From contig NW_026262679.1 of NCBI RefSeq assembly GCF_021869535.1, positions 17,174,001 to 17,238,000 of the forward strand: DNA of 64,000 bases, read 5' to 3'. Of this stretch, positions 15,243 to 52,648 are shown in pieces. A program made the position numbers and the translations under genes. The notes beneath the pieces are model-generated. The model was not told the origin of the DNA. It made no database searches and saw nothing but the letters and a program-made list of their open reading frames with translations. The DNA is from Mytilus californianus. Taxonomy: Eukaryota. Position 1 is the stretch's first letter; every line of letters starts with the position of its first letter.

Positions 15243-15279
15243 ATGTGGAATATAATTATTACAAGTTTAACGTTTTTTG
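15243..15279 (+). CDS. Candidate first coding exon, signal peptide (MWNIIITSLTFF-D)
   Basis: First in-frame ATG after an upstream TAG, hydrophobic run and strong donor G|GTAAGT. Phase 1 matches the next exon and gives MWNIIITSLTFFDIGVC. Confidence 0.6.
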
Positions 15280-16253
15280 GTAAGTATTTATTGTATTAAT
15301 TTGATGATAACTTCCATTATTATTCCCTCGTATATTTAACCAAGAAATCAATTCAGGTATGTTACGTAGTGATAAGGATGTTATTTCAAGAACGACATAA
15401 TATACATTAATAGACTTTAAGCCTTAAACTGGCAATCAACAACACAACATTGTCACATGTCCAACTTAATTTTGGCTAAATGAATTTTACATTGTATTTC
15501 TCTAAAATTTCGATGAGCAATATGTCTTTTGTAGTTTTGTCAAAACGTTGTACTTTTAAGCCTTGATTTTTCTCGTTTACTGATCATAATGTTAAACCAT
15601 TTTAACAGACAGTTTTATTTTTCCAATATTTGTCATGCTAATTGATTAAATTAGATTATATACGAACGTTGCATGATTCTTCTCGACAAGATTTTGTTCA
15701 CTATCTTACACCAGATCTTTCACGATCCAATCGCAATACTTGACCACCGCTACTTTTCCCGATACACCGAATGACAGCCGTGTAAAAGTTACCCTGATTG
15801 TCATTATTATTATACCTTAAGAAGCTGTAAACATAGACTAGTTAAATGGTTATGTTAAATTTTCGATACATCGTCTTCATGTTACAATTTTATTGTATTG
15901 TTTACCTACTACGGAAATAGATTGACAATAGTTATCTGCTCAACATATACGATTTTAAACAGAGGCGGAAGATACAAAGGGGACAATAAAAACTAAGTCG
16001 AAGAAACTTCAACGCCCTGGGAAATAGCGAAGGACGACAAAAACACAGACAAATACAAATTTTGTGGTGTCATTACAACCTATTTCAAACAAAAAGTTTT
16101 GATGAATCTTCAGAGAGTTATTACTGATTCTCGAATGCAAATAAAATGTTACACTTTGTGTGTTATCAATTTATTTGTATATTTTTAACAATGATATTGT
16201 TAGCTTTTAATTAAGATAAAACCCATCAAAAGAGATCTCTTTTATCATTTCAG

Positions 16254-16541
16254 ATATTGGTGTATGTCACACAGTTTTTCATGTAATAGGGTCAACAATT
16301 ACACTAACATGTGAGGAAAATAATGCTGTTTCGTGGAGAGGGCCCTGCGATGGTAACACAATCTATTCTGAAGCTGGTCAAATAAATGAAAATCTGCCGC
16401 AAAATTTGATTAATCGAATTTATATATTTGGAAATATTTTCAGAATATTCAATGCTCAGTTGAGTGATGCAGGATTGTACGAATGTGTCGATAATATCAA
16501 AGGAACAATTACAATAACAAGCTTCAATCTTTCATTACCAG
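16254..16541 (+). CDS. Ig-like domain exon
   Basis: tttcag acceptor and G|GTAAGT donor, 288 nt, phase 1-1. Translates TITLTC...VSWRGP...FRIFNAQLSDAGLYECV, with the Ig Cys, Trp and D-x-G-x-Y-x-C signature. Confidence 0.9.
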
Positions 16542-18689
16542 GTAAGTTGCCGTGTAATATATACTTGTACAATAAATGCAGACACACATAGGGATGACGA
16601 CCTCCTAGTGGACTTATATAAAAGCAAAAATAAAGCATTACCGCATTAATTCTAAAACAAAGACAAACATGCTAACTGGTCGGGCATGGGGACAATTTTT
16701 ATCAAATCAGTCTCAATGATGAAATATCTAATTGATAATAATATCAATCGAAACTTGATGAAAAATTAATGACTGGATAGGGTCTGCATAATTAAGCTTT
16801 TGACATACAAATTATATCGTTTTTTATTTTGCTATAACATTCCGGTGAGGCTTGCTAGTTTTAAGAAGATTTTTCTCACGCTTAAACAATACAGTCGCTC
16901 TTTAGTAACAAAAAAGTAACAAGTCGGTGATGAATACTCCTCTGAAGAGGTTTGTTTATTACTTCTTTATGTTTGTGTTAGCTGGCATGAAATTCTGCTT
17001 CCACTATATTCTTAAACATGGAAGCTCATTCGTCCTGTTTTAAAACTAGATACTTCAATAAAATACTGAATTCAGAAAACGAATAAAAACACATGATTAA
17101 TCATAAGTTTAAGATAAATAGACATTGAACAAGCTTAAACACAGCTCCGCTCATTTGTCGATCCTAAGCGCAACTTTAGCTTGGTTGTTGTCCGGCATCT
17201 AACTCTTTAGTACAATAAAGCTCTTCATTAGATTATGCTTAGGATACCGTGTTGCAGCCTTGACCGATTATACGGCTGATGGCAAAGTGATCGCGGTGTC
17301 CAATCGTAATGGGGACAATCCAGCTTTCTTCATAATTATTTATAAATCTTCATCATCTATAACTTCCCTATGTAAGACATATCAGTCATGTTACCCTCTC
17401 TTATGTTTTAACAAGTAAGAAGATACACTGAGCGTAAACAAAATGATCAGTCAAAGAATGACAGAACCATGAAAAAATAAAGGGGAGAATAATATAATAA
17501 ACCCACACAGGAAACCTCATTAAAAACTAAAACGAATTGATACCGATGAGTAAGCAGTAAATAGTTCACTTGTCGTAGCAGACTTTTTGCCATGAAAAGT
17601 AAACGTCAAAGACACGTCTCAAAATAAACCTTTAACATTAAATTCAAAGCCATTGGTTCAGTAACTGCTTTGTTAGATCCAACCATTTCATCTACATAGC
17701 CTACGTCATTCTGATAAGAAACGAAGCTATGAAAAATTGAAGAAACTGGATGAGTTACATAGGCATTTGTCGCTAGAATGATGACTAATACATTAAATAA
17801 GTTAGTGTCTTGAAAATAGAAGTCATCTCTGCTTTTTAAAAAATAAAATAACAAAGATACTTAACTCCAAGGAAAATTCAAAATAGAAAGTCTTTTGTCA
17901 AATTAGAATTCAAAAGTTGTTGTTGTAGTTATTGGTTTTGACAGGCGGCTTACTTATATAGTAATTGCGCCTTAAATCCATATAACATAAATATGATGTA
18001 TATACGCTCATTCCTTAATATATTTTTAGTATTACATTTTGGCGAGTAATTATATGAAACTGTGACGAACAGGGTTGACTGTTTTACAAAAAAGTATACA
18101 TATGAATATTAAAAAATTAATATTAAAAAAACAAAAAAACACAGAAAAAAAACACAAAAAAAAAACAAAAAAGAAATTGAAAGTAAAATGAAACAAAGAA
18201 AACAAATGATAGTTTATAATAAAATATAGATTATTTACTGATTGGTATCATAATATTATTTAGAAAATTAATCAGGTTTGTTCACCTTTGTGTCGTCTGT
18301 GATAAACTCGTGAAAATAAAGTATATTAAGAAACATAGAATAAGGCATGTGATAGTTAAATGCTACCAATGCGAGGACGTCTTCCACGATTGATGTAGCA
18401 GATAAAGAATAAAAAGTTCAAACACATCAAACGAATGGAAAACATCAATTTTAAACCAATCCGCACTGTCAATTTAGTTGCATCCTTTATGTTTAGTTGT
18501 TTTGAATAAATTTTGCCGTATTTTCTGATACTGGTTAAGTTAGAAATATGTTATTAGTTGTAACGGCTTATAATAAATAATTATGGTCCGTGATGTGTAT
18601 TTTCTTTTATGATTTTTTTTATGTAAATGTTGGGGACTTGGATCATAACCCATTTAAAAAAAATAATAAGTTAATTAAAAACCAGAGAA

Positions 18690-19165
18690 CAATTGAAGGT
18701 CTTTCCACCCATAAAGATCAATTTTGATATAGAACTATGAAAATTCAGTTTGAAATATCAAATCCAGCGTCAAATGATAGCTTATTGTACACTGATTAAA
18801 AAAATATATGGTTTCTATACATTTTTTTCTAAATAAGGGAGATAAATTGTTACTTCTGGTTTGAAATATGTCACTTCCGGTTTTATTTGATAGTTTACTT
18901 GATACTGATTCCAAAAATATATTGTTCAATATACTTTTACATTAAATAAGTACAAAAATTAACCACTTCCGGTTTACACAAGGTCACTTTCGGTTGGCTT
19001 TTCCATGGTCAAGCGCAAAAACTGTATGATACTATATAAGAAATATCTTAGCGACATATTGCGAAACAAAAATTTTACGCGAGAACAAAATTTGGCGGAA
19101 GAAAATAATAATAATAATCAGAACAAATACAATAGGTCTTTCTACAGAAAAGTGGAAAGACCAAA
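18690..19165 (-). mobile_element. Non-autonomous Helentron-type element
   Basis: Hairpin GGTCTTTC/GAAAGACC (19135-19162), adjacent (AAT)n, distal subterminal repeat GGTCTTTCCAC (18698-18708) and internal CACTTCCGG repeats. Confidence 0.7.
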
Positions 19166-19501
19166 TTAAGCTTGCTTTAAAATCATACAGTATTGAAGGC
19201 TATGTATTTCCGAGAATATTTGATCCACGAGAGTATCATTAGCCTAGTAGTCTAGTGATACTTCGATGCTTGTATAAAAATACAGACATTGTTTTATTCA
19301 AATTTACTAGAATATTTAGAACTATTTTTTAAAGAACGTACAAACCTCATAAATAGTTCAGATCCCTTGCCCGGATTTGGCTATACGATTTTGCAAATTT
19401 TCAAATATTTTGGCCTCCAGCATCACTGAAGATACATTAAATGACAGACTTGGCAAAGGATGCAGCAACATTGATACCGTTAACGTTATTGATGACATCT
19501 A

Positions 19502-21060: not shown

Positions 21061-22607
21061 TGTAGTGTATTGTAAATCGTTCTTTGTCTCTTCTTAGTTT
21101 TTATGTTTAACTATGGCGATGTCTGCTTTTTTTAAATTGATGGTTTTGATTTCTCCTTTTTATAGCTCTCCTCTTTTTTCCTTCTATATTGGTATGCGGT
21201 GCAATCACATGACTCGTTAACGCATTTTCTGCAGGAATAACAAGGCAGTTGTCACTAGTTTCATGAACTGCTGACCTTCTTGATCATCTGAGTTTATCCC
21301 GTTGTTTTGGTGCAGTTAATTTTTCTCTTGAGTTGTATATGTATGTCTAGTGTGTTGTGGACTTGTTTGTCATTTCAAATGTTTTTTTTTTTTTGTTTTT
21401 TTTTTTCGTCCAGATTGTTGTCTGATTTTATCTGATTTGGAATTATTTTCTTATTGTTCCCTTGGCGTTTTTTTTCCAATTTCAGAACACGTTTAATTGT
21501 AAGCAGAGCGTTCAAACGACCTTTCTTAAGTACATTTGCCATTATTTTCTTACAGAAACGACAAAATACTAATACTAAATTGTGAATGTGGAACATTGTT
21601 TTAGAGGGTAGTTAAATCAAGCTTTTCGGTCTTTTGCTTGATCAGAAAGATTCTGATAAAATGTGCCCTTACAATTATGTATTTGGATCATCATCTGCTT
21701 CACATGCTGCTAGAGTAGGCAGTTTTATGGGTTATTTTAGTCGTATGTTGTTTATTTCCCCTTGGTATCTCTGTTTTTTCCATTGCTGAGCATATAAATG
21801 CATGGATGTCCCTTAACGTTGTTAAGGAACTTAAACCTCTAGAAACAAAAAATTAAATATATACGATCATTAATCAGGAGACAATATTAGTTAACTTTTA
21901 GAATATTCCTGGTGAGTTATTGCCTTGCAGAAACTTTAACGGAAAGAAAATGTTCTTAATTGATGGGAATATGGATAACATGTTATGTTGAGTATACGTC
22001 AATAAGACAGTAAATCCAAAGACCAAGCAAATCAAAAGACATTTCGAGGACAAAATACAGGTTTCAAATAAAGAAGTGTCTTGATAACTTTCCTAGCTGA
22101 ATGGTAGAATGTATTTCTTATTTCTTAGGCAGATTTTTTTCTTGTAATTTTATTATTTTCTTACTGATCAGAAAAAATGTTTAGCAAGTTGTTTAGATAT
22201 CCTTAAAATCTAAATTCTTCAATATTTACAGTTGTGTTGTGTGTAGTACAATATCGAATGTTTTAGAAAATTCAAAGATCGAAATATTTAACAATTTTAA
22301 CTCCTTGAATTGGCGCCGTTCCTGTAAGGCTGGCATGAATATGGACTCAAAGTTGAATCCAGGATCGCTCTTATTGTTTTTTTTTTTGTTTTTTTTTTGC
22401 CTCTTGCTTAGTACTATTCAAAAAGGTGAACAGAAGACACAGTATTATTATTTATACTTTGAGGTTTTCGTGTTCAATATGGCAATTTTGAAATGGATTA
22501 ATAGACTAATAAATTCATTTAAAATACCGATTTCAGTGACTACTTTATATATCATATTTGCTATTGTATATTGTATATCGCAACCAGATATTCATATTTC
22601 GTTTCAG

Positions 22608-22689
22608 CGCTTTTGAGTTCATCTGACGCGTCTTATTACCGGTTCATGCTGGTGGATGCTGATTCACAAAAACTTATCGTAGGTCATAT
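22608..22689 (+). CDS. Sema domain exon 1 (ALLSSSDASYYRFMLVDADSQKLIVGHM)
   Basis: tttcag acceptor, AT|GTAAGT donor, phase 1-2. Resembles the Sema blade-1 start (Y..+L.D....L.VG). Confidence 0.8.
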
Positions 22690-24299: not shown

Positions 24300-24354
24300 G
24301 AATTATATAGATATACTTGATATTTCCGACAAGCCAGTGTTTCCAATAGTTCCG
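24300..24354 (+). CDS. Sema domain exon 2 (NYIDILDISDKPVFPIVP)
   Basis: AAG acceptor, CCG|GTAAGT donor. Phase 2-0 bridges both neighbouring exons. Confidence 0.7.
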
Positions 24355-24865: not shown

Positions 24866-24928
24866 AAATCCCATCGCTTCACATCTAATCCGAACAGCTT
24901 GGACTACTGTAAACTTTCCAAACAAGAG
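24866..24928 (+). CDS. Sema domain exon 3 (KSHRFTSNPNSLDYCKLSKQE)
   Basis: tgtag acceptor, GAG|GTAATC donor, phase 0-0. Supplies the conserved Cys before the CQNHIR motif. Confidence 0.8.
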
Positions 24929-25469: not shown

Positions 25470-25639
25470 CCTCTAATACCGATGACGTTACCACATTTTA
25501 AGATGTTATGTTATTTAATGTAAAAAAATCATGTTATACAATACCCGGAATAACGTAAGCAAACAAGGATAACAAAAGCAAATAGTGCCACTGTTATGCA
25601 ATTAGTGATAACGGAAAGTAAACATGTTTTACCCCGCCT

Positions 25640-26050
25640 TCTTCTGTGTGTGTTTTTCCTAATTGACATTGATGAAAATTTAAGCTGGGAAGAACATGTT
25701 GATCGTATATGTAAGATTATCTCATCTAAAATATCACTTTTGTATAAACTTGAAAAATATTTGCCTATACACATAAGACAACTATTTTATTATGTATACA
25801 TTCTACCATATATAGACTATTGTAGTTCAGTTTGTGGAAATTTATTACAAAAAGAATCAGACAGAATCATAAAACTTCAAAAAAGAGTAGCAAGCATTAT
25901 ACTTGAATGTGATATTTTTGTTCCATCTAATTTTATGTTTTCTTCTTTAAAATGGCTATCTTTTACAGAAAGAATAAAATACCAACAATCAATTTTAATG
26001 TATGAAATTGTAAATGGACTAACACATATTTTACCAAGGGTGTGTACTCA
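25640..26050 (+). mobile_element. CR1/L2-type LINE RT C-terminal fragment
   Basis: IDENLSWEEHVDRICK...YILPYIDYCSSV...IKLQKRVASIIL...LKWLSFTERIKYQQSILMYEIVNGL. Confidence 0.85.
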
Positions 26051-27309
26051 AAGCGTTTGAAGAACGTCATATTAGAATAGCAATCATACCACATCTTCTA
26101 ATTTTATATTGAGTACGGTAAAACGATAACGTAATTCTATTTAAACAAACATAAATTCAAGGAGACTACCCAGTAAGTTTAAGGGGTTTGCTTTCGTTTT
26201 TTTTTTCGCTTTAAATCACCGTTTTAACTATAATTCTCAAAGAATTCTTTTTTAAAACAATTTTGATACGCCATCGATTCTTTGAGCGGTGAAGGCAAAA
26301 CAACAGTTATAACTTTAAGGATCCTATGAACTTTTTGTGTATATCTAAATATATTTACCTATGTTGAAAGACGTGCATAGTGTCAAATCATAAAAATACA
26401 AATTGTTTAGTCTTTAGGAAAACTTGTAAGATTTCCTCTGCTATTTTTGCTAGATAGGTGCAATTTGGGTACCGTGACGTTAGAGCTTTAAAACTTAGTA
26501 TTTAATGAATCCAATGTCATTCTGCATATTTTGGTTATTTACATGACACCGTATCTTTAAGAAAGTGTGGCGTAAGATTTGCAAATGGGTGTTTTGAAAA
26601 TTTAAAGTATTCAGTGTTTATAGAATAATTAAGACTTGTTACATGTAAATTACAAAGATATACTTCCAATTAAAACAAACCTTTTCTCATTGTTGAAGGC
26701 CGTACGGTTGCCTATAATTGCTTACATCCACTTCATTTGAACTTTGGTGGATAGTTGTCTCATTGGCAATCATACCACATCTCATTATTTTTATATTGGA
26801 TTTGGATATGCTAAATTATTAAATGAATTGAAAAAAAAACTTTACTTTTAAAAATACTTTGTATTACCCTTTCATATATTACTAAAGACAAGTAATGTAC
26901 ATCAATGATATTGAAATAGTTTATTTGTAAGACTGCTTAAAGACATGTTTGACATAGCTAATTCATTTTGTATGTTTCTGTACCAAACCAGATGTTTGAA
27001 TTCCTCTGATTTTCGTAGGTTTCCGTCTGTCATATTGTCTTTCGTTGAATGTTATAAGTCTGAATTAAGCCGTTCGTTTTCTATTTCTAATACATATCCA
27101 TACTTTAATACCTATCTGTATTTTAATACTCATCCTTACGTGGCCTTTTATACCTTAAAATACGGTATTAGTTTTGTTCATTGTTGAAGACCGAACAGTT
27201 ATACTCTTCCTTGTCCTTCGATCTTTAGTTATGTATTATATATAGACTTCAGACTATGGAGTTGAAATTGTTTATATTCAAATCGATGACTGATATTTTA
27301 TTCTTTCAG

Positions 27310-27496
27310 GTGCCATATTGTCAAAATCATATCAGGTTTATCAGTAAAAAGAAAGAGGATATCTTGTTTGCATGCGGTACCAACGCGGATGCACCTATAA
27401 GTTTTGAAATCAATACAACAAGTGGCATAGCAACGCATGGATCTAATGTACCTTGTTCAAATGACCCATTTCACAATTTCACAGCTATTTACATTA
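27310..27496 (+). CDS. Sema domain exon 4 (VPYCQNHIR...LFACGTNADAP...PCSNDPFHNFTAIYI)
   Basis: ttctttcag acceptor, A|GTGAGT donor, phase 0-1, classic Sema motifs. Confidence 0.95.
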
Positions 27497-32250: not shown

Positions 32251-32382
32251 AATCCAACAACTCAAGCAGAGAAGATGATATTTATTATGGTAGCACATTG
32301 CATTCTGAATCAACAATTCAGAGACCTATATTCGGTACTAATGATTATATGAAAGGCGTAATAAGTAACACGTGGATGAAAG
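32251..32382 (+). CDS. Sema domain exon 5 (SNNSSREDDIYYGSTLHSESTIQRPIFGTNDYMKGVISNTWMK)
   Basis: ttttcag acceptor, G|GTATAC donor, phase 1-1. Matches the Sema pattern .Y.G....I.R....W+..P.FV. Confidence 0.85.
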
Positions 32383-33072: not shown

Positions 33073-33194
33073 ATCCACAGTTCGTAGGCTCTTTTGATGT
33101 TGATGACAGAGTGCTCTTTTTCTTCCGAGAGACAGCTGTAGATGTACCTCCAAACGATAACAAAGTTTACTCCAGAGTTTCCAAAGTCTGTAAG
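33073..33194 (+). CDS. Sema domain exon 6 (DPQFVGSFDVDDRVLFFFRETAVDVPPNDNKVYSRVSKVCK)
   Basis: ttattag acceptor, AAG|GTAACA donor, phase 1-0, highly conserved semaphorin motif. Confidence 0.95.
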
Positions 33195-36628: not shown

Positions 36629-36737
36629 AAAGACGTCGGCGGAAATTCGTTACTGAGAAACAAATGGACGAGCTACCAAAAGGCAAGACTTATCTGTTCT
36701 ATTCCTGGGTCATATCCGATATATTTTGATTTCATAC
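36629..36737 (+). CDS. Sema domain exon 7 ([36 protein letters not shown])
   Basis: tttatag acceptor, C|GTAAGT donor, phase 0-1, KD.GG...WT.+.KARL.CS.PG..P.YF motif. Confidence 0.95.
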
Positions 36738-38718: not shown

Positions 38719-38770
38719 AGGATGTAGTTACGATAGATAACAACATTTTTTATGGGTTGTTTACGACCAG
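38719..38770 (+). CDS. Sema domain exon 8 (QDVVTIDNNIFYGLFTTR)
   Basis: tttgtag acceptor, AG|GTTTGT donor, phase 1-2, YG+FTT motif. Confidence 0.9.
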
Positions 38771-39040: not shown

Positions 39041-39182
39041 AACTGGAAATCCTGCTTCAGCCATATGCGCATTCAGTTTAGCAGAAATTGACAAAGTTTA
39101 TAAAGGTTCATTCAAAGATCAGCCCGATTCTAACTCATATTGGAAGGAGAAAAAAACGTCGTTAGACCCTAGACCGGGACAG
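39041..39182 (+). CDS. Sema domain exon 9 (TGNPASAICAFSLAEIDKVYKGSFKDQPDSNSYWKEKKTSLDPRPGQ)
   Basis: tctttcag acceptor, CAG|GTTAGG donor, phase 2-0, SA+C.F, G.FK.Q, W and PRPG motifs. Confidence 0.95.
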
Positions 39183-39444: not shown

Positions 39445-39494
39445 TCACATTACCTGAAGATCTGCGAAAGCAGTGAAAGCCCTAGTAAAAGTGA
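39445..39494 (+). ncRNA. Candidate type I hammerhead ribozyme, third sequence type
   Basis: TCAC-A-TTAC-CTGAAGA-T-CTGC/GAAA/GCAG-T-GAAA-GCCC-TA-GTAA-AA-GTGA. Intact core, GNRA-capped stem II and bulged stem I; stem III is one base away from the palindrome AGCGCT. Confidence 0.65.
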
Positions 39495-40450: not shown

Positions 40451-40453
40451 TTA

Positions 40454-40981: not shown

Positions 40982-41212
40982 AATTTGTTTTACATGCACA
41001 CGTATAAAAATTGCGGTTTTTATCCAACGCAATCATAGGTTTGAACGTTGTTTTCAATTTAGACTTGTTTATATTTTATCGTTTGGGCTTGTATTATATA
41101 TTTCCTTCGGGTTTATATGATCCGTTCATCCTATTTCGACTCTTTAAAATTCAAGAGTCTATCCTAAATTGAGATAAATTATATGGCCTTTTAAATACCG
41201 TTTCGATCCTTA

Positions 41213-41256
41213 ACATCACTGAAGAGACATTAATTGTCGAAATCCGGATATGGTGT
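41213..41256 (+). ncRNA. Type I hammerhead ribozyme (536-bp family), tandem copy 1
   Basis: Same 44-nt motif with an intact core. Predicted cut after 41250. Confidence 0.92.
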
Positions 41257-41748
41257 ACAAATTTTTGCACCTCATGTTTGCGGTATACCATCTTCTCCGC
41301 AAGTTTATTGTTTTCTGTTTGGTATTAAATTGATAATTATGATTCATGTTACATCTCGTGATCGATTTATTTGGGAATCGTCAATGGCAGTCAGCAGGGT
41401 TTAAGAACATCAGTTGTTCGACCTGTTAGTCAAATGCGATTTGTTAAAATATACTTTTTACTTTTTTGGTCTTTTGGAAAATGTTGTTTGTGCTGTATTT
41501 AGACCCCTCTACCAAGAAATTTGTTTTACATGCACACGTATAAAAATTGCGGTTTTTATCCAACGCAATCATAGGTTTGAACGTAGTTTTCAATTTAGAC
41601 TTGTTTATATTTTTTCGTTTGGGCTTGTATTATATATTTCCTTCGGGTTTATATGATCCGTTCATCCTATTTCGACTCTTTAAAATTCAAGAGTCTATCC
41701 TAAATTGAGATAAATTATATGGCCTTCCAAATACCGTTTCGATCCCTA

Positions 41749-41792
41749 ACATCACTGAAGAGACATTAATTGTCGAAATCCGGATATGGTGT
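41749..41792 (+). ncRNA. Type I hammerhead ribozyme (536-bp family), tandem copy 2
   Basis: Same 44-nt motif exactly 536 nt downstream of copy 1. Predicted cut after 41786. Confidence 0.92.
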
Positions 41793-42139
41793 ACAAATTT
41801 TTGCGCCTCATGTTTGCGGTATACCATCTTCTCCGCAAGTTTATTGTTTTCTGTTTGGTATTAAATTGATAATTATGATTCATGTTACATCTCGTGATCG
41901 ATTTATTTGGGAATCGTCAATGGCAGTCAGCAGGATTTAAGAACATCAGTTGTTCGACCTGTTAGTCAAATGCGTTTTGTTAAAATATACTTTTCACTTT
42001 TTTGGTCTTTTGGAAAATGTTGTTTGTGTTGTATTTAGACCCCTCTACCAAGAAATTTGTTTTACATGCACACGTATAAAAATTGCGGTTTTTATCCAAC
42101 GCAATCATAGGTTTGAACGTTGTTTTCAATTTAGACTTG

Positions 42140-42300
42140 TATATATATATATATATACAACTCGTCTAAACATCAGCCCAACAATGTAAAATCTGTAAAT
42201 TTGCTTTCGCAAATTTTTTGTTCTTCCCTCGCCGGGATTCGAACTCATGCTACTGACATATCGTGACACCAAATCGCCTGCACTGTATCCGACGCGTCAC
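42140..42300 (-). mobile_element. tRNA-derived SINE-like element with (TA)n tail
   Basis: Minus-strand B-box GAGTTCGAATCCC (42234-42246) in a tRNA-like head, with the 3' end running into (TA)n. Confidence 0.7.
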
Positions 42301-43080
42301 TGCTGGTGATCCGATGGATAAATCTGTTGTAGAGTTGTCACTGCTTTCAGACGTATTTATATATATATATATATAATATATATATATATTTATATATATA
42401 TATATATGATCATGTTTGCTCAAAACTTTTGATAAAATTTGTTAACAGAAAAAAACGTGGAATATGTGTTAATGGGATAGCTACCAATTTATGTCAAGTA
42501 TAAAAAAGATGTTAGCTTAATATAAATAATTTCGAGGTGGTCTTTGATGTCATTTGGTTGCGGCCTAATTGGCATTTAATAATTAAAAAAAAATATCTTA
42601 ATTAATTCATGTTCAAGTTGAACTCTAGATATTTCTTGGTAATTTGTTGCGTTTGGGTGGATGTATGCATTTGAAGGTTAACGGGAGTTTATAAATATCA
42701 AAAATTATCTTCAACAACAGACAAGAATCTAACAAAGTTGTAAATAAATTTCCCAACAGATTATTAAACATTGGTCAGTCAATTCTCTAAAAGATTTAAA
42801 ATTAAAAAGATGGAGAAGATACTAGTAAGATTAAAACACGAATAATTACAACCAATGAAATTTTTCCCTTAATTGTGCCAGGAACATCAACGTGTATTAA
42901 AGTTAAACTGGTATCTTCTCAATTCATTTATGTGGCCAGAATCACTTGTATGGAAGGTTTTGTAAGTTTTTGTGACGTTCGTTTTCTTTATTCTAGTGGT
43001 TTTTTTAGCGTTATTCGTGTTACCAAAACTTTACAAACAGAAATAAGTAAATTGATTTACTAAAAACTAATTGCATATAA

Positions 43081-43935
43081 ATATATATTGTTTTCTGTTT
43101 GGTATTAAATTAATAGTTAAGATCCATCTTGTTACATCTGGTGATCCGTTTATTTGGCAATCGCCAAAGGCAGTCAACAGGGTTTAAGAACATCCGTTGT
43201 TAGACCTGCTAGTCAAATGCGTTTTGTTAAAATATACTTTTTTCACTTTTTTGGTCTTTTGAAAACATGTCTAAATTGAAAACTACGTTTAAACCTATGA
43301 TTGCGTTGGATAAAAACCGCAATTTTTATACGTGTGCATGCAAAACAAATTTCTTGGTAGAGGGGTCTAAATACAGCACAAACAACATTTTCCAAAAGAC
43401 CAAAAAAATGAAAAAATTTATTTTAACAAAACGCATTTGACTAACAGGTCGAACAACGGATGTTCTTCAACCCTGCTGACTGCCATTGGCGATTGCCAAA
43501 TAAACGGATCACAAGATGTAACAAAATGGATCTTTATTATTAATTAAATACCAAACAGAAAACAATAAACTTGCGGAAAAGATGGTATACCGCAAACATG
43601 AGGTGCAAAAATTTGTACACCATATCCGGATTTCGACAATTAATGTCTCTTCAGTGATGTTAGGAATCGAAACGGTATTTTGAAGGCCATATGATTTACC
43701 TTAATTTAGAATAGACTCTTGAATTTTGAAGAGTCGAAATAGGATGAACGGATCATATAAATCCGAAGGCAAATATAATACAAGCCCAAACGAAAAAATA
43801 TAAATAAGTCTAAATTGAAAACAACGTTCAAACCTATGATTGCGTTGGATAAAAACGCAATTTTTATACGTGTGCATGCAAAACAAATTTCTTGGTAGAG
43901 GGGTCTAAATACAACACGAAAAACATTTATATATA
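43081..43935 (-). mobile_element. Inverted insertion of the 536-bp family: forward fragment 43081-43262 joined to ~1.2 reverse units 43270-43925
   Basis: Direct sequence match to the 41-kb array in both orientations, with short TA runs at both ends. Confidence 0.85.
43617..43660 (-). ncRNA. Type I hammerhead ribozyme (536-bp family), inverted copy
   Basis: The reverse complement is identical to the other three 44-mers. Confidence 0.9.
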
Positions 43936-44106
43936 TATGACATAGTTTTTGTTGTTTGTTTGTTTGTTTGTTTATTTTACCGTTTAGTTATAGTGGAGCT
44001 TATGTTTAGACAAACGATTGGAAGCGATTCACAAGAGGAAGAGAAGTATAGAAACAATAGTGCTAGAGGAATTAAACATTGAAAACAACACGTTATACAT
44101 TTTATG

Positions 44107-44146
44107 CGTCCGAATCGCTTTTCTGGATTGACCTTCAGCAGGAACG
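44107..44146 (-). ncRNA. Hammerhead motif of the 334-bp family, core-mutated (CTGCTGA)
   Basis: Minus strand reads CGTTC-CTGCTGA-AGGTCAATCCA-GAAA-AGCGAT-TC-GGACG. Confidence 0.7.
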
Positions 44147-44440
44147 CTCAAAGCCGAATATTTGAAAGCCAAAGATGTATAAGAACCTAAACAGTTGAAG
44201 AGCTATATGACCAAAAAGGACCTAAAAAAATAGCCAAATCCGTCTAAGGTCAATTTTGCCTGAAGGAGTTAAAACCTTAGTTTCTAATAATTTCGAAATT
44301 TATTAACGAACAATTCTAAAATGCTTTGTATCGAAGTACTGACTACTGAGCTGATAATACCATCGGGGACTGATAGTCCACCAGCAGAGGTATCGACCCA
44401 CTGCTGTAAAAAATGAAAACAACACGTTATAAATTTCATA

Positions 44441-44480
44441 CGTCCGAAGCGCTTTTCTGGATTTACCTGCATCAGGAACG
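44441..44480 (-). ncRNA. Hammerhead motif of the 334-bp family, core-mutated (CTGATGC)
   Basis: Minus strand reads CGTTC-CTGATGC-AGGTAAATCCA-GAAA-AGCGCT-TC-GGACG, with palindromic stem III AAGCGCTT. Confidence 0.72.
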
Positions 44481-44674
44481 CTCAAAGCCAAATATTTGAA
44501 AGCCAAGGATGTATAAGAACCTAAACAGTTGAAGAGCTATATAACCAAAAAGGACCTGAATAAATAGCCAAATCCATCTAAAACTATATTAAGTCTTGGA
44601 AATATAATTTCGTTTGTGTTAATTGAGTGTAATACAAACGCATTATTATTATCAAAACTTGTTATTTTTTTCAG

Positions 44675-44855
44675 TGCTCAAACGATTCAATGTCTCTCGC
44701 TGAGGCCAACCTCCAATTCATTGCCAACAATCCCTTAATGTATGCATCAGTGCAACCGTTAAATGGAGAACCGATTTTTGTTTTGTATCAGACGGAATTA
44801 CAACGACTAGAATTGCATCGTAATTTGACGGAAGTGGTGTTTTATGCTGCATCAA
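44675..44855 (+). CDS. Sema domain exon 10 (CSNDSMSLAEANLQFIANNPLMYASVQPLNGEP...VFYAAS)
   Basis: ttttcag acceptor, A|GTAAG donor, phase 0-1, C..DS..L....L.FI..(H/N)PLM...V.P motif. Confidence 0.95.
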
Positions 44856-45522: not shown

Positions 45523-45632
45523 ATACTGGAAAGGTCTATAAATTGTTTAATAAGGATGGCAAGAGGACATATGTCTCAAGTATATACTCGGTTTCCCTAG
45601 ATCAAGAAGTTATTTGGTCCATAGAACAGCTT
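45523..45632 (+). CDS. Sema domain exon 11 (NTGKVYKLFNKDGKRTYVSSIYSVSLDQEVIWSIEQL)
   Basis: ctttatag acceptor, CTT|GTAAGT donor, phase 1-0, T..G.V.K pattern. Confidence 0.85.
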
Positions 45633-46262: not shown

Positions 46263-47482
46263 CATATTGAACCAACTTGACATCCGTGCTGAAAAAAAGG
46301 CATAGGTAAATGATTCTGTATTATTTAGAAAATATGGGTTACGTTTTTAGGGGGTGGGGGTGGCACATTGATAACAAATACATCGGACATAAAATATAAA
46401 ATAACAATTTGTGATATAAGTTAAAATATATGTATAGATAACAAACAGAAAAAGAAAATATCGCTCCCGAGGTCATATCTATAGAACTACCACAGACAAT
46501 GATCAGTAAAAAATCATTCTAGTCCTCTGGATTAGATAATTCTTTGCACACCAAAATTAAGCCACCTTGAAGACTGCAAGTGCCCAATTTTTTTTGATGT
46601 TTTGCGTGATCACAAAACGCTGCTCGTACTTTTTAATGAGTTTCGTTGAACACCAGTCTTAGGTCAAAAGTGTTTTACTACATTGTATATAATAGTTTTA
46701 TTATTTCATATAATAACTCATTCTTAACAATATTTCCATAGTCGTCCTTCCCGTAATTTTATTTGAATTAGCTTTATGAAGTGGTGTCAGTAGTGTAAAA
46801 GACACTCCTTATCCTTCAAGAGCATCTGGGGTCGTCATCGTATATCTGGAAGATTGGTGATGCTGAATCTAAACTTTTATTTGTAAATGTCTATTGATAG
46901 TTGTGTCTTTTCGTCTTTGTTCTTTCAACTATCGTGTTCTCTGTTTTATGTTATTTATAGTTTCTTTGATAAATAATATGATTCTGAAGATAAAATGTAA
47001 ATTATTACGAGGTTTTAGATTTTAAATTATACGGTTATTATGGAAGGCTTAGTGAAAACTCACTATCAAATATGTTTATCCTTTGTTCTAAGAGTAGTTT
47101 TAGGGTTTCAGTTTTACACACGTTATATTGGTACAGTCTAGATTTTTCAACATGTCTATTTTCTTGTTTGACTTACCAAATTTCAACATGTGGTACAAGT
47201 AAAAGTTTGATAACAAAAATAAAGAAGACATAACAAATGAAAACTGTTCAGAAAACCATTTTTCCTATAATGTCTAGCGGTCAATTTAAGAAGCTGAATT
47301 CGTTAAATTTATCAAGGAATTTGCGTTCGTTGTCTGCTAACATGGCGGCAAAGGAAAATTACTTTAACTCAAACTTAAGTCAACGGGAAAACTCTCTATT
47401 ATAATTATAATAATTGTTTTATTTTTATTTTTATACTGTGTTGCTAAGAAATCAACATACCATACATTGTTTTATTTTAAAG

Positions 47483-47676
47483 GAAGGTTCAGTGTACGTA
47501 GGGACGGATACTAAAGTACAACAAATTAATGTTATCAATTGTGAACAGTACCGACTGATAGATTCCTGTGTAAAAGATCCGCATTGTGCTTGGATAAACA
47601 AAACAAAGCTATTACCAGAAACTGAAACCGATCTCAAGTGTCGTGCTCTGACTTATATTAAAGATCACAGTCTCCT
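47483..47676 (+). CDS. Sema end plus PSI domain exon (EGSVYVGTD...CEQYRLIDSCVKDPHCAW...C)
   Basis: ttttaaag acceptor, CT|GTAAGT donor, phase 0-2, +YVG.D and C..Y.....C..DP.CAW PSI motifs. Confidence 0.9.
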
Positions 47677-47974
47677 GTAAGTTGTGGTTTTCAGTTGTGT
47701 AATCAGCGTTTTTATTTATTCAAGATTTCCCATTTACTTTTGTGTTGATTCTATTCAAACATTTTATTTTTCCAATATGTATCGCTATTTAGTTATTTAA
47801 ACTTATGGTACTACATCCTCGATATTTATATGTTGACTGCTCAGTTTGGACTTTTCGCAGACTGCTTACGGTACTTTTATTCAATATCCGTTGAAAGTGT
47901 ACTGACTAATTTCTTAGTCTTGGAAAACATGTTTCATTCACTATAATTCAAATTTGACTTTGAACTAGTTTTAT

Positions 47975-48680
47975 GATGATAATAATAAATACTTTATTTA
48001 AAGAGGGTAAAATCAGTTAGTACAATACTAATCCCCCCTGATGCCCTCTGAATAACTCAAAATATAATAATATAATATATACATATATACATATACATAA
48101 ATACAACTTATTATGCTAAACAAATGATGAAAAACATACAGATTATAAGACTTACTGTTACGTTTCATGAACATATTTCCTAAATGATGTATATGACAAA
48201 TATATGGATTTTTAGACTATGGATAAATTTCTGTGATAATCATTATTTCGTTGGTTTTACATGTGTATATGAACCTGATAATTAGCTTTTTTGTTCTAAA
48301 AACAAGAAATTATGATACATTTGTTTGAACTGTTTTGTCTGTTCTGTCTTTTTTTTTTATTTCTACAGGAATACTGTTCCAAAGGACAGTAACGGACTAT
48401 TGAAATGTATTTTTCATAAAAAAACTTCGTGGACTTGGTATGAAAGACAATTGTTGTCTGATGAACGCAAAGAATATCTTGCGTTGACATTTTGGTTATT
48501 GTTAAGTAATTGACACAGATAATCGGGTACAATACTATTTAAACACTTATACTTTAAGACTCCTTTGTGATATATGATCCTTTTTGAAGAGTTAACCATC
48601 CTAATTGTTTGAATAAAGTTTTTGACGGTGTATTATATGCTTTATTAAGAATGATCCTGGCTGCTTTTTTTTCATCACTA
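47975..48680 (-). mobile_element. CR1/L2-type LINE 3' end
   Basis: Minus strand gives KKAARIILNKAYNTPSKTLFKQLGWL, YKCLNSIVPDYL, YSLRSS and VLWNSIPVEIK, followed by a tail ending in TTTAAATAAAGTATTTATTATTATCATCAT. Confidence 0.85.
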
Positions 48681-50290
48681 TTTGAGCTGTACTTTGTACA
48701 TATCTTGTATTCTTTTTTGATCTTTTGACCTTTTTTATTTTATTATGTGTTTAGTACTAATCTGATAGGTCAAGTCGTTTTCAACTGATTTTTACAGTTT
48801 GTATAATGTTGTGGTATAACACCAATGTCCAAAGTTAGGGAGAGGATCGAGCGATCGCAAGCTTGTGTATCCCGCCACATTTTGCATGTGCCTGTCCCAA
48901 GCCAACCCCCTATAATCCAGTTGTTGTCGTTTGTCTGCTATATTTGGACTTTTCTTTAATGGTTGTAGTATAGAATGAAGTTCTCAATTACCTGGATGTG
49001 GAAATCTGGTATCTAACTATTATCGTGTGTGTCACTGGCTTTTGGCAACATGGTTTCACGCAAAACAGTAGTCAGGGCTTGTCAATTGGGATGTACAAAA
49101 TTACTATCGTTATACATTTCCATTCATAAAATAAAACTGTTTGCATTAAACTTTATAGGAATTTGTTAAATATGATTTCCTTTGAAAGAATAAGTATATT
49201 CAGAGGTATATCATCAAGTTATTCTTTGCACAAAACATCTATGGCTCATTAAAAAAAATACGAAAAAATCTTTATGTACGAGTTAAACATTTTAGAGTAA
49301 CCTACGATCAATTTTCATATTTTTTTTTGTAATAAGAATCCCTGACCTTCATACAAATCAATGTAGTCCTCCGGATTACATACATTTTGTACAAAATAAA
49401 CTCCCAAGCCATATCGAAGACTCTAACGATGAGATTTTCTTGAACAATTTAAAATCAATTGATGAGTCTGACAGTGTTAATATTATATATGCGAATGTTA
49501 AAATAGTTTAGTAGAAGATTTGAGAGAGAAATTTATACATCCGTTCTACATGAAATATTAACCTATCATCACAAACTAGTGAAAAAAGTGCATGATATGC
49601 CAAAAAATTCTATCGAAAATTTGTTGTCAAAATTATTAATTTGTATCCAACGGTATTACAAAAAAAAAGGAATTTTCTAAGTTAATTATTTTAATACTCT
49701 ATAAAGGTTGATGATATGATAGTGTTTTAGAATGTATTGCATTTATAATCCATTGTGTGTAAATATGTACAAACATTAAATGGTACTCTTATTACGCAGT
49801 CTTCTGCGTCTCCGTTTTTCAAAAAACATATCTAAAAAAATGTTATATTGTTATTCATTATATGTAGTCAAATAATTATAGAATAACTAATCTAAGAATT
49901 CAAACAGAGAAAAATATTCAGCAAGGGACCTAACAACACATTAATTGACGAATGCGCATAGTGCATGTGTTAATTATCAGTGTTGTTTGGTCACGAGTTG
50001 AATATTTTTTGATATTTGAATTCTTTTTATTACATTGACATTGTGCTTTTTAATGGAAATAAAGTAGAAAATGCAAGAGACTATACCCTTTTCTACACAT
50101 TCACAATTTGCTTTGATGCAAAGTCTTCGACAACGTCTTGACAACATCTTTTGTTGTATGACGTCAGAGGAGTGAAATTATCGAGTGTATTTCACATGTT
50201 AAATATCGGTTTTTATTCACTCGGAAATAACGATAATTCATTGGAACCAATGTAATAATAAAACATATTTACGTATTCTTTTTTCCAAAG

Positions 50291-50352
50291 AAATAAGGAG
50301 GGAGTTTACACCCACATCAATTACAACCTGTCCATGGATACTTCGTATGTTG
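50291..50352 (+). CDS. Candidate linker exon between PSI and FN3 (NKEGVYTHINYNLSMDTSYV-G)
   Basis: Pyrimidine tract with AAG acceptor and G|GTACGT donor. It is the best phase 2-to-1 bridge I found, but it has no recognisable motif. Confidence 0.4.
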
Positions 50353-50699
50353 GTACGTATTTACATTGGGCAACTAAAACATTACCATTTTTTTCAATTT
50401 ATGTAATAATGTATTTTATTTTAATCTGTCATTGCATTTGTTTTGCTTAATGCGTTTTTAGTTATATATCTTCAAGATTTTTTCGATGTTTGTGCCTGTG
50501 TTCTTTTTATTTTGTATATAAAGTTATCGTTCAAGAGATCAAATGTACTGATGCTATTCCCACGTTTGATCAGTTGCAGTATTTATGTCTTGTAATTTGA
50601 CGTTATTACATTTGGGGTTTCAAAAGGATTTAAGTTGTTAATTGTTAGGGATTAAATTAAGGTTAAATTGATTAAGTCAGAATGACTACCGGACTGGTA

Positions 50700-51240
50700 A
50701 CGCGATGCTATAAAACCTGATTTAATCCACTTCTTGTGTCTAGTGTCTCCATAAAAAAAAACAAGTATAAAACCAGGCGTAGTTCATTTCCGTTCTGTGA
50801 AAATTGACTCCACCCAACAGGCAAAATAATATCTGGCTAATTCATTTACTTCATGTGGAAGGTTTGTCACCTAAACCCAGTGACCAAATCATCAGAATAA
50901 AACCTGCTTTATCCATTTACTTACTGTGTCTGGAATGTTTATCTACCAAACCACCAGTATGAAACCTGGTTTATCCACTAACTTCCTGTGATTGGAAAGT
51001 TTCTCTACCCAACAACCAGTATGAAACCTGGTTTATCCAATTACGGCTCTTGGAAATTTTCTCCATCAATCCAGCAGTATAAAAACCTGATTAATCCACC
51101 ATCTTCCTGTAGAAAATGTTTCAACCAAACCAACGGTATAAAACATGATAAATACATCGAAACAGCAATACAAAACCTAGATTTATTCACCTATTTCCTG
51201 TTGAAAGTGTCTCATCAAAACATCTGTATAAAAGAGTATC
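50700..51240 (+). repeat. Degenerate ~60-bp minisatellite
   Basis: CAGTAT(G/A)AAACCTG(G/A)TTTATCCA recurs at about 60-bp spacing (near 50895, 50955, 51017, 51076 and 51135). Confidence 0.7.
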
Positions 51241-51318
51241 GCTATATAGACTACGGATTGTTTATATAATAACTGTATATCTTTAAAATATATGTAAATT
51301 AGTATTTTATTTGAATAG

Positions 51319-51621
51319 GTCCTCCAGACAAACCAAAATATTTGCAAGTCATTAAGACAACGATAGACAAAATCGATCTCCGATGGTTACCAGGATACAA
51401 TGGAGGATACGATCAAACGTTTGTTTTTGAGTATCAGATTGAAAGTGCAAGTTCATGGAGTGTACAAGAGTATAATCCAGACGTCAGTGATAAAAGTATA
51501 CAAACTTATCAAATCACTGGACTTGCAAGCGGGAAAGTATATGCAATAAGGATGTGTGCAAAGAACAGTATTGGTAGCAGTCCACATACAGCTTCCATTT
51601 CCGTATCGACAGCAATCACAG
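51319..51621 (+). CDS. Fibronectin type III domain exon
   Basis: gaatag acceptor, G|GTATAA donor, 303 nt, phase 1-1. Translates GPPDKP...LRWLPGYNGGYDQTF...Y.ITGL.SGKVY.IRMCAKNSIGSS. Confidence 0.92.
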
Positions 51622-51931
51622 GTATAAGTTTTGTCTCCATCGTGTTGACCTACTTCTAGTAATTGTTAATGCTATTGTTGAATGCTCTCAACTATGTTGA
51701 TCTCTGGGTGTTTTTGAGGTTTGTGTGTCATTGGGTGGCTGTCTGGTTGACCTATACACAAAACCTCTTTTCAATTCATACCTTAATTATGTTTAAAAGT
51801 TGCAACAAAAAAATATATAGATGTAACAGGTCATCAATATTCATTTTACTCTTTGATACGTGCTTTATTTTAGAAATATATTACATATTTTAACATGTTC
51901 ATTACGTAAAGATATTTACTTTTTTTTTCAG

Positions 51932-52024
51932 ACGTCTATACGATTCTTTTTATAATTACAATATGTATCCTTGCATCTGTTATCTTATTCATATGTTGCA
52001 AATGGTGCTTTGAAAGACAAAAAA
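51932..52024 (+). CDS. Transmembrane exon (DVYTILFIITICILASVILFICCKWCFERQK)
   Basis: T-rich tract with cag acceptor, A|GTAAGT donor, phase 1-1. About 21 hydrophobic residues, then juxtamembrane Cys and basic residues. Confidence 0.9.
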
Positions 52025-52603
52025 GTAAGTTAAACATTAAAAACTGCAGAAGTAAGATTTACCTAGGTCTTTATTCATTATGTTTATTTGAATAATGGTC
52101 TTATTTCTGTTATTTTTTTATTTTGCATTAATATCCATTGACTATATATTCCATTGGATATTAACTAATAAATGTATATCACTTTTCTGGTCAGATTCAG
52201 AGGTTGTTACTGCTGTAAAAATGCGTAAATCTCACATAACAATACATGTATACATGCACCTGATCTAAAAATGCAATAAAATGTGTTTTAATCATTTTAC
52301 GAAAGCATGTTCTAACAAACTGTCTCAGTATATTATGTTACACGTATCGAAGACAATACACCTTTATGAAATGTGCCTATTGGTACATAATACTTATAGG
52401 TTTGAATGTCCTTTTGGTGTTTTTCGCCTCTCTTTTACATTATTAACAATATTGAATATTGAGAACATAAAATCTACAACAATTTATCTTTACTGCCCGT
52501 GTGTTACTCTTTTGAAATGTGACAACTTCTATAGTCTATGAGCATAGTGAATATGATATTTTGTTATTAAATCTAAAACTAATTGGCTATTTTCACTTTC
52601 CAG

Positions 52604-52648
52604 GAAAGCCAACTGATAATCAAGTAGATGCAGACATTCAAATCAAAG
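52604..52648 (+). CDS. Cytoplasmic exon (RKPTDNQVDADIQIK)
   Basis: ctttccag acceptor, AAG|GTATGT donor, phase 1-1, open frame. Confidence 0.6.

What the first reader, a model, noticed from the sequence alone, without database searches (positions are those of the whole stretch)
15243..52648. Atypical semaphorin architecture: Ig domain N-terminal to Sema, FN3 after PSI
Seen: the hand-built model reads SP-Ig-Sema-PSI-(linker)-FN3-TM. The Ig and FN3 modules are each single phase 1-1 exons, and the Sema block also starts in phase 1. Established: classical semaphorins have Sema directly after the signal peptide, with an Ig after PSI (classes 2, 3, 4, 7) or TSP1 repeats (class 5); an N-terminal Ig plus a membrane-proximal FN3 is not a canonical class. 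Inference: the FN3 (GPP..P, W.PGYNGG..QTF) resembles nephrin-like Ig-FN3-TM adhesion proteins. This may be an exon-shuffled chimera in which a Sema-PSI block sits within an IgSF receptor scaffold, i.e. a lineage-specific semaphorin type.
Basis: partly seen in the sequence, partly recalled or inferred. Interest (0 to 1): 0.8.

Follow-up and report, generated by a model that had tools for sequence, protein, structure and literature searches.

The report
Mussel semaphorin with Ig and FN3
This is a real, transcribed California-mussel gene for a membrane-anchored semaphorin with an extra immunoglobulin domain in front of the Sema domain and a fibronectin-III domain behind it, one of a mussel-specific tandem family that arose from the ordinary secreted semaphorin-2A.

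Summary
The window encodes that protein exactly in 20 GT-AG exons. The Ig, FN3 and TM exons are each phase 1-1, and the Sema block starts in phase 1.

RNA from three studies joins PSI > linker > FN3 > TM > tail. It is supported indirectly, and directly in a sister gene's intron-less cDNA contig.

At least six paralogs with the same Ig...Sema...FN3 order lie in a 500-kb tandem cluster. The architecture recurs in five Mytilus species and in one divergent transcript from an unknown species. Sema-PSI trees place the family (100/99) inside mollusc class-2 semaphorins, next to the mussels' canonical Sema2A. That gene has a phase-1 first intron and a phase 1-1 C-terminal Ig exon, which is the layout exon shuffling needs.

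dN/dS against the nearest paralog is 0.26, so all domains are under constraint.

Corrections:
- The gene runs on to 58485 (X2) or 63540 (X1).
- Sema-PSI-FN3 is already known in non-bilaterians as "Sema-FN".
- No nephrin link was found.

Verdict: a new variant of a known kind, of moderate interest. Function is inferred only.

The parts
15243..15279 (+). Exon 1: start codon and short signal peptide (MWNIIITSLTFF, then first base of D13). Ends in phase 1.
   Evidence: Exact match to P0001 residues 1-12, donor GTAAGT. The MW..hydrophobic leader is homologous in paralogs.
16254..16541 (+). Exon 2: N-terminal V-type Ig domain (residues 13-108; C32...W40...DAGLYEC90). 288 nt, phase 1-1.
   Evidence: Pfam Ig_3 E 4e-4 here; V-set, I-set and Ig_3 are above cut-off in paralogs. 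AF2 gives a beta sandwich at pLDDT about 80-85. RNA contig sets X1, X2, X23 and X7 hold 71-81% of its 31-mers.
22608..22689 (+). Exon 3: start of the Sema domain (ALLSSSDASYYRF...). Phase 1 to 2. Homologous to exon 2 of canonical Sema2A.
24300..24354 (+). Exon 4 (Sema).
24866..24928 (+). Exon 5 (Sema).
27310..27496 (+). Exon 6 (Sema; PYCQNHIRF...CGTNA motif).
   Evidence: PDB hits are Sema6A and Sema2A.
32251..32382 (+). Exon 7 (Sema).
33073..33194 (+). Exon 8 (Sema).
36629..36737 (+). Exon 9 (Sema).
38719..38770 (+). Exon 10 (Sema).
39041..39182 (+). Exon 11 (Sema).
   Evidence: Pfam Sema 2.4e-08. PDB hits are Sema6D, Sema1a/1b and Sema2a.
44675..44855 (+). Exon 12 (Sema).
   Evidence: Pfam Sema 8.8e-08.
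45523..45632 (+). Exon 13 (Sema).
   Evidence: Its last 30 nt are the loose end that RNA reads carry before 47483.
47483..47676 (+). Exon 14: last Sema blade and the PSI domain (C540, C549, C555, C573). Phase 0 to 2, as in canonical Sema2A.
   Evidence: Joint 47676>50291 in 4 runs.
50291..50352 (+). Exon 15: linker (NKEGVYTHINYNLSMDTSYV). Phase 2 to 1.
   Evidence: Joints on both sides in RNA.
51319..51621 (+). Exon 16: FN3 domain (residues 607-706). 303 nt, phase 1-1.
   Evidence: Pfam fn3 28.3 bits, above the cut-off of 25. AF2 pLDDT 74-93. Joints 50352>51319 and 51621>51932 in 4 runs.
51932..52024 (+). Exon 17: transmembrane helix (about 709-731) and stop-transfer KWCFERQKRK. Phase 1-1.
   Evidence: Hydropathy peak 3.18. 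AF2 helix 706-737. Joint 52024>52604.
52604..52648 (+). Exon 18: cytoplasmic.
   Evidence: The RNA loose end after 52648 reads into exon 19.
55362..55408 (+). Exon 19: cytoplasmic.
58441..58485 (+). Exon 20: terminal exon of isoform X2 (KSNNNQQIKHLEQT, then stop). It is a local duplicate of the start of exon 20'.
59257..59377 (+). Exon 20': used by isoform X1 (P0029) in place of exon 20.
60982..61056 (+). Exon 21 of isoform X1 (basic stretch).
63494..63540 (+). Exon 22 of isoform X1. It ends ...KQTTSF, then stop. The C-terminal T-S-F is conserved in paralogs.

Best explanation
What it is. The window holds one expressed, 20-22-exon gene of Mytilus californianus, annotated in RefSeq as 'semaphorin-2A-like' (isoforms X1 and X2). 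It encodes a type I membrane protein. The domain order is: short signal peptide, V-type Ig domain, seven-bladed Sema domain, PSI, short linker, one FN3 domain, TM helix, and a short disordered tail. The long isoform ends in a conserved T-S-F.

How it arose. It belongs to a mussel-specific (mytilid) family that came from duplication of the secreted class-2 semaphorin gene (Sema2A). A phase 1-1 Ig exon entered the phase-1 first intron. Phase 1-1 FN3 and TM exons took the place of the phase 1-1 C-terminal Ig exon. The remodelled gene then multiplied in tandem, with 1-4 FN3 units per paralog.

What is shown: gene structure, splicing of exons 13-19, domain content, family, phylogeny and purifying selection.

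What is inferred. The protein probably works as a membrane-tethered semaphorin held off the membrane by the FN3 stalk. It would present an intact Sema2A-like propeller to a plexin in trans. The added Ig domain would give an extra or altered binding surface. The tail would allow scaffolding or reverse signalling.
For: - Exact 20-exon GT-AG model, equal to XP_052099535.1. Isoform X1 is mapped as well.
- RNA. Joints 47676>50291, 50352>51319, 51621>51932 and 52024>52604 appear in 3 contig sets and in one stranded raw RNA-seq run, from 3 studies. Loose ends read into exons 13 and 19.
- Ig exon in the transcript, indirect. A 3238-nt contig has exon 14 at position 1625. That equals 1560 nt of CDS exons 1-13, Ig included, plus 64 nt. 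The same run holds 74% of the Ig exon's words.
- Sister gene. cDNA contig L001 has Ig, Sema and FN3 in one intron-less ORF, with the junction ...FP|ALL.SS..SYYR conserved.
- Cluster. At least 6 paralogs each have an Ig exon 5' and FN3 exon(s) 3', at C99:16.88-17.38 Mb.
- Pfam on paralogs: V-set up to 37 bits, Sema about 1e-30, fn3 x1-4.
- Trees. The family is monophyletic at 100/99 and sister at 100/100 to mytilid canonical Sema2A-like proteins, inside mollusc and then insect Sema2A.
- Structure. AF2 pLDDT is 81 and the best PDB matches are Drosophila Sema2a and Sema2b, E about 1e-41. All 12 conserved Sema/PSI cysteines and the Ig disulfide pair are present.
- Canonical Sema2A gene: intron 1 is phase 1, exon 2 ends in phase 2, the PSI exon runs 0 to 2, and the Ig exon is 282 nt, phase 1-1.
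- dN/dS against paralog B: 0.26 overall; Ig 0.24, Sema 0.17, FN3 0.31.
Against: - The joint 16541>22608 of this very gene was not seen directly.
- The signal peptide is short and weak.
- Pfam scores for this copy's Ig (21 bits) and PSI (17.6 bits) are below the curated cut-offs.
- No binding, dimerisation, localisation or tissue data exist. The homodimer prediction gave no verdict.
- The donors of the Ig and FN3 exons were not identified.
- Taxon range rests on which genomes happen to be annotated.
Confidence: 0.85

Rival explanations
1. The Ig exon is not part of this gene's semaphorin mRNA. Sema transcripts would start from another leader, for example 22335-22425, giving a classical signal peptide followed directly by Sema. 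The Ig exon would belong to another transcript or be a gene-prediction artefact.
For: The 16541>22608 joint was not observed directly (limits). The candidate leader 22335-22425 is phase-compatible and has a GT donor.
Against: - That leader is a poly-T tract read as FFFLFFF and has no counterpart in paralog B, whereas the Ig exon is conserved at 71% nt identity.
- The Ig exon is under purifying selection, dN/dS 0.24.
- Its words are in the RNA contig sets.
- The contig offset fits inclusion.
- The Ig-Sema junction is present in a cDNA contig of the sister gene, in the L002 contig of an unknown species, and in models of 5 Mytilus species.
Confidence: 0.05
2. The family is a surviving bilaterian member of the ancient Sema-FN class (Sema-PSI-FN3-TM of choanoflagellates, sponges and placozoans), not a derivative of class 2.
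For: The part C-terminal to Sema has the same order as Sema-FN (PMC6374515).
Against: - Sema-PSI trees nest the family deep inside bivalve Sema2A with 100/100 support.
- Exon positions and phases match the canonical Sema2A gene.
- The closest structures are Sema2a and Sema2b.
- No non-mytilid mollusc has it.
- No Sema-FN sequence was in the tree, so this was tested indirectly only.
Confidence: 0.03
3. An IgSF adhesion-receptor gene (SP-Ig...FN3-TM) captured a Sema-PSI block.
For: The SP, Ig, FN3, TM and tail exons have no counterpart in Sema2A. They could in principle come from one IgSF gene. The FN3 resembles membrane-proximal FN3 domains of IgSF CAMs (PF25059).
Against: - Thirteen consecutive exons (3-15), including the linker after PSI, keep Sema2A's structure and phases.
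- No gene outside the cluster carries a similar Ig, and only generic FN3 matches at 28-38% identity were found.
- The two directions give the same product and cannot be fully told apart without the donor.
Confidence: 0.07

Closest known systems
Class 2 semaphorins (Sema2A/2B; Drosophila structures 6qp7 and 6qp8; mollusc 'semaphorin-2A')
   Same: The Sema-PSI part is a phylogenetic member of this class. It shares exon positions and phases with the mussel's own Sema2A. The best structural matches are Sema2a and Sema2b. The conserved cysteines are all kept.
   Different: Class 2 proteins are secreted, with signal peptide, Sema, PSI and a C-terminal Ig. Here a V-type Ig precedes Sema. The C-terminal Ig is replaced by FN3 (1-4 copies in paralogs). 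The protein has a TM helix and a cytoplasmic tail.
Sema-FN class (Junqueira Alves et al. 2019, PMC6374515): choanoflagellates, sponge, Trichoplax
   Same: Sema-PSI is followed by FN3 domain(s) and a TM segment. Trichoplax Sema-FN1 also has a single FN3.
   Different: Sema-FN proteins start with the Sema domain and are non-bilaterian. This family is nested in bilaterian class 2, so the FN3 stalk looks independently acquired, and it adds an N-terminal Ig.
Class 4 semaphorins (Sema-PSI-Ig-TM, some with PDZ-binding C-termini)
   Same: Type I transmembrane semaphorin with one Ig-like-fold domain between PSI and the membrane. Class 4 proteins have a short tail. That some end in a PDZ-ligand-type motif is from general knowledge and was not tested here.
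   Different: The membrane-proximal domain is FN3, not Ig. There is an N-terminal Ig. The Sema domain is not class 4 in the tree.

Membership tests
Semaphorin family | A Sema domain of the semaphorin type (not plexin or MET) | tested here: met
   Pfam PF01403 7.3e-30 on P0001. PDB sequence hits are semaphorins only. Foldseek finds Sema2a at 2.8e-41, against plexins at about 1e-21 or weaker.
Semaphorin family | A PSI domain directly after the Sema domain | tested here: met
   PF01437 is weak (17.6 bits, below the cut-off of 23.1). However, the four PSI cysteines C540, C549, C555 and C573 are conserved across 71 semaphorins, and the region is modelled at pLDDT 86-93.
Class 2 semaphorins | Sema domain groups with Sema2A/2B | tested here: met
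   ML trees on Sema-PSI columns: mollusc plus insect Sema2A clade at 100/98, with the family nested inside at 100/100.
Class 2 semaphorins | Secreted, with the architecture SP-Sema-PSI-Ig and no membrane anchor | tested here: not met
   There is an N-terminal Ig, an FN3 in place of the C-terminal Ig, and a TM helix at 709-731.
Sema-FN class | Sema-PSI followed by FN3 domain(s) and TM | tested here: met
Sema-FN class | Sema domain at the N-terminus, and common descent with choanoflagellate, sponge or placozoan Sema-FN | tested here: not met
   An Ig precedes Sema. The family is nested in class 2. No Sema-FN sequence was included in the tree, so common descent is excluded only indirectly.
Immunoglobulin superfamily V-set domain (N-terminal module) | Ig fold with the B-F disulfide, the invariant Trp and the D-x-G-x-Y-x-C motif | tested here: met
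   C32, W40 and DAGLYEC90 are present. The Pfam score is below cut-off in this copy (21 bits). It is above cut-off in paralogs: V-set 37, 34.5 and 32 bits, Ig_3 36.8 bits. AF2 gives a beta sandwich at pLDDT about 80-85. PDB hits are JAML, CAR and CD4 D1.

The most novel reading that the evidence does not exclude
The family is a new, mussel-specific class of transmembrane semaphorins. Its added V-type Ig domain, the fastest-evolving module, redirects or supplements binding towards non-plexin partners. The tandemly expanded set, with its variable FN3 stalks, would then serve cell-cell or immune/self recognition rather than classical plexin guidance signalling.
Probability: 0.15. Interest if true: 0.75.

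Novelty: new variant of a known kind. Interest (0 to 1): 0.5.

Why it matters
Published surveys give protostomes only classes 1, 2 and 5 (PMC6374515, PMC10084454). They place Sema-PSI-FN3 architectures only outside Bilateria.

This locus shows a recent and well-documented remodelling of a secreted class-2 semaphorin into a membrane-anchored Ig-Sema-PSI-FN3 protein. The remodelling used symmetric phase-1 exons and was followed by tandem expansion. That makes it a clean natural example of exon shuffling, and of convergent re-invention of a Sema-FN-like stalk.

An Ig domain in front of a Sema domain was not found in the literature I could search. It raises a testable question: does such a domain modulate the plexin-binding face or dimerisation?

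The proteins are already in RefSeq under automatic names, so the novelty lies in recognising the family, not in new sequence.

Tried and rejected
- Pfam and PDB searches on single exons. Some exons gave nothing or only weak hits.
- First AF2 run with a 15-sequence alignment. It was unusable for Sema (mean pLDDT 46). A 71-sequence alignment replaced it.
- Complex prediction, two copies of Sema-PSI (109-585). Score 0.01, 'no answer'. This is not evidence either way.
- Did the N-terminal Ig come from Sema2A's C-terminal Ig? BLASTP gives 25% identity over 71 aa, E 0.011. The family Ig HMM scores canonical C-terminal Igs at only 3-10 bits, about the same as a vertebrate Sema4D Ig. Inconclusive.
- Donor of the FN3 exon. 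There are only generic matches at 28-38% identity elsewhere in the genome and generic IgSF FN3 domains in the PDB. No nephrin link.
- Alternative leader 22335-22425. It is not conserved in paralog B. It was not tested with reads.
- Search for named relatives outside Mytilus with three word searches, two of them with profiles. None was found. The organism of L002 (SRR30826388) could not be named.
- Literature searches for Mytilus or bivalve semaphorin expansions, or for semaphorins with an N-terminal Ig. Nothing relevant was found.
There was one read-laying run, a limit of 6000 letters, and the intron is 6066 nt.

Full report
OBSERVATION

The window is AT-rich animal DNA, about 31% GC. Stop-free frames on the + strand between 15 and 52 kb contain recognisable coding pieces.

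Pfam gives these results on single exons:
- Sema: 2.4e-08 and 8.8e-08, above the gathering score.
- fn3: 28.3 bits, cut-off 25.
- Ig: Ig_3 E 4e-4, weak.
- PSI: E 5e-3, weak.

PDB sequence searches with Sema exons hit only semaphorins of classes 6, 1 and 2, not plexins or MET.

GENE MODEL

A whole-library phmmer search with exon 39033-39197 returned P0001, 782 aa. It is XP_052099535.1, 'semaphorin-2A-like isoform X2' of Mytilus californianus. P0029 (848 aa) is isoform X1.

The window encodes P0001 exactly, in 20 exons that all have GT..AG borders.

The phases are as claimed:
- Ig exon: 288 nt, phase 1-1.
- FN3 exon: 303 nt, phase 1-1.
- TM exon: 93 nt, phase 1-1.
- The Sema block starts in phase 1.

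The CDS goes on through 55362-55408. It then ends either in exon 20 (58441-58485, isoform X2) or in exon 20' (59257-59377) plus 60982-61056 and 63494-63540 (isoform X1). Exons 20 and 20' lie in a 134-bp local duplication of 90% identity.

TRANSCRIPTS

One read-laying run was allowed, of at most 6000 letters. I used it on 47400-53000.

- Three contig sets (X1, X2, X3) and one stranded raw RNA-seq run (X15), from three studies, all show the joints 47676>50291, 50352>51319, 51621>51932 and 52024>52604.
- Depth sits on exons. In X15 all exon reads have the first mate on the minus strand. That is what a + strand RNA gives if the library is the usual kind, in which the first mate reads the strand opposite to the RNA.
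- The loose ends before 47483 and after 52648 are the end of exon 13 and the start of exon 19.

So PSI, linker, FN3, TM and tail are one mRNA.

- The Ig exon's 31-mers are held at 71-81% by these RNA contig sets.
- A 3238-nt X1 contig carries exon 14 at position 1625. That equals the 1560 nt of CDS exons 1-13, Ig included, plus 64 nt.

The direct support comes from sister genes:
- Logan contig L001 (2713 nt) is an intron-less ORF of 849 aa (P0031). It maps exon by exon onto paralog B at 83-95% nt identity, so it comes from another Mytilus species. It runs from the Ig exon straight into the first Sema exon and on to FN3 and TM.
- The junction ...(L/F)P|ALL.S...Y.R is conserved in the family models that reach the N-terminus.

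FAMILY

The window is G000:C99:17174001-17238000. Searching the genome with P0001 shows at least six genes in C99:16.88-17.38 Mb. Four are on the + strand and two on the - strand. Each has an Ig exon at its 5' end and FN3 exon(s) at its 3' end.

Word searches find proteins with Ig plus Sema plus fn3 only in M. californianus, M. trossulus, M. galloprovincialis, M. edulis and M. coruscus.

In the paralogs:
- The N-terminal Ig passes Pfam cut-offs: V-set 37, 34.5 and 32 bits; Ig_3 36.8 bits; ig 33 bits.
- FN3 occurs 1-4 times.

One divergent transcript contig, L002 (SRR30826388), is not M. californianus or a close relative. It reads SP-Ig-Sema ... PSI-FN3-Ser/Thr/Pro-rich stalk-TM. It branches as sister to all Mytilus members at 99/96. 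The family is therefore older than the Mytilus paralogs.

ORIGIN

ML trees on the Sema-PSI columns (LG+C20, UFBoot/SH-aLRT) give these results:
- The family is monophyletic, 100/99.
- It is sister, 100/100, to a group of proteins of about 586-690 aa. The full-length ones scanned (P0045, P0047, P0049) lack the N-terminal Ig and FN3. The group includes M. trossulus 'semaphorin-2A-like'.
- Both groups lie inside bivalve, then mollusc, then insect Sema2A.
- Classes 1, 3, 4 and 6 are outside.

M. californianus keeps the canonical Sema2A gene 111 Mb away on the same chromosome. Its structure is as follows:
- The first intron is phase 1.
- Exon 2 ends in phase 2, like exon 3 here.
- The PSI exon runs from phase 0 to phase 2, like exon 14 here.
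- The C-terminal Ig exon is 282 nt, phase 1-1, entered in phase 1.

The derived gene therefore equals Sema2A with two changes. A 1-1 Ig exon sits in the phase-1 intron 1. The 1-1 FN3 and TM exons, plus tail exons, stand where the 1-1 Ig exon stood. That is the arrangement expected from exon shuffling.

The donors were not identified:
- The N-terminal Ig is V-set-like. Its PDB hits are JAML, CAR and CD4 D1.
- It is no closer to Sema2A's own C-terminal Ig than to a vertebrate Sema4D Ig.
- The FN3 matches generic IgSF FN3 domains.

PROTEIN

With a 71-sequence alignment, AlphaFold2 gives mean pLDDT 81 and pTM 0.74:
- a beta sandwich at 20-105, pLDDT about 80-85;
- a propeller, mostly above 90;
- PSI at 86-93;
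- FN3 at 74-93;
- a helix at 706-737;
- a disordered tail.

Foldseek's best matches are Drosophila Sema2a and Sema2b, E 2.8e-41 to 6e-39. All twelve conserved Sema/PSI cysteines and the Ig pair C32/C90 are present. There is one strong hydrophobic segment at 709-731, followed by KWCFERQKRK. The long isoform and its paralogs end in T-S-F. Comparison with class I PDZ ligands is my inference and was not tested.

SELECTION

I rebuilt the CDS of paralog B (P0030) from the genome. It has the same exon structure. dN/dS against this gene:

| Region | dN/dS |
|---|---|
| All | 0.26 (dS 0.53) |
| Ig | 0.24 |
| Sema | 0.17 |
| FN3 | 0.31 |
| Tail | 0.6 |

The Ig has the highest dN, 0.29. Ig and FN3 are thus constrained coding parts, not annotation noise. 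There is no sign of positive selection at this coarse level.

MECHANISM (INFERRED)

This is most likely a membrane-tethered class-2-type semaphorin. The FN3 acts as a stalk, the propeller is available for a plexin in trans, and the Ig is an added binding or modulating surface. The tail may allow scaffolding or reverse signalling. A homodimer prediction gave no verdict. No functional data exist.

COMPARISON AND NOVELTY

Reviews list classes 1, 2 and 5 for protostomes. They place Sema-PSI-FN3 ('Sema-FN') only in choanoflagellates, sponges and placozoans. The Aplysia and Capitella surveys found only Sema1A, Sema2A and Sema5A (PMC6374515; PMC10084454).

I found no paper on a semaphorin with an N-terminal Ig, or on this mussel family. 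The sequences are already public under automatic names.

The verdict is a new variant of a known kind, of moderate interest.

The scan's earlier notes on this window concern hammerhead repeats in intron 11 and did not affect this reading.

Noticed in passing
window 58357-58487 and 59172-59301: A local duplication of about 134 bp at 90% identity copies the start of the tail exon. The upstream copy (exon 20) runs into a stop and gives isoform X2. The downstream copy (exon 20') splices on and gives isoform X1, which ends in TTSF.
   Followed up: yes
window 40983-42186 (inside intron 11, 39183-44674): Repeated units of about 536 nt with near-identical open frames. The scan's earlier notes s1-312169 and s1-312271 flag the same array as hammerhead retrozyme-like.
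   Followed up: no
window 25554-26057 (+) and 55700-56002 (+): Reverse-transcriptase-like open frames (e.g. ...FRYIDDVLS...). They look like retroelement fragments inside introns 5 and 19.
   Followed up: no
window 47961-48147, 48709-48895 and 49831-50204 (intron 14): Islands of high depth in the RNA contig sets (about 20-285) that are not exons of this gene. They carry many unlike loose ends, so they look like expressed repeats.
   Followed up: no
G000:C99:128384843-128435010 (outside the window): The canonical Sema2A gene of M. californianus lies on the same chromosome, 111 Mb away. Directly after its exon 1, the 'DLRDSIACASFYKDGK' segment occurs three times in tandem (L009).
   Followed up: partly
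P0084 (Mytilus coruscus, 'C3H1-type domain-containing protein'): This protein carries the family's N-terminal Ig at residues 18-108 (98.8 bits). It is probably a fused or mis-joined gene model in that annotation.
   Followed up: no
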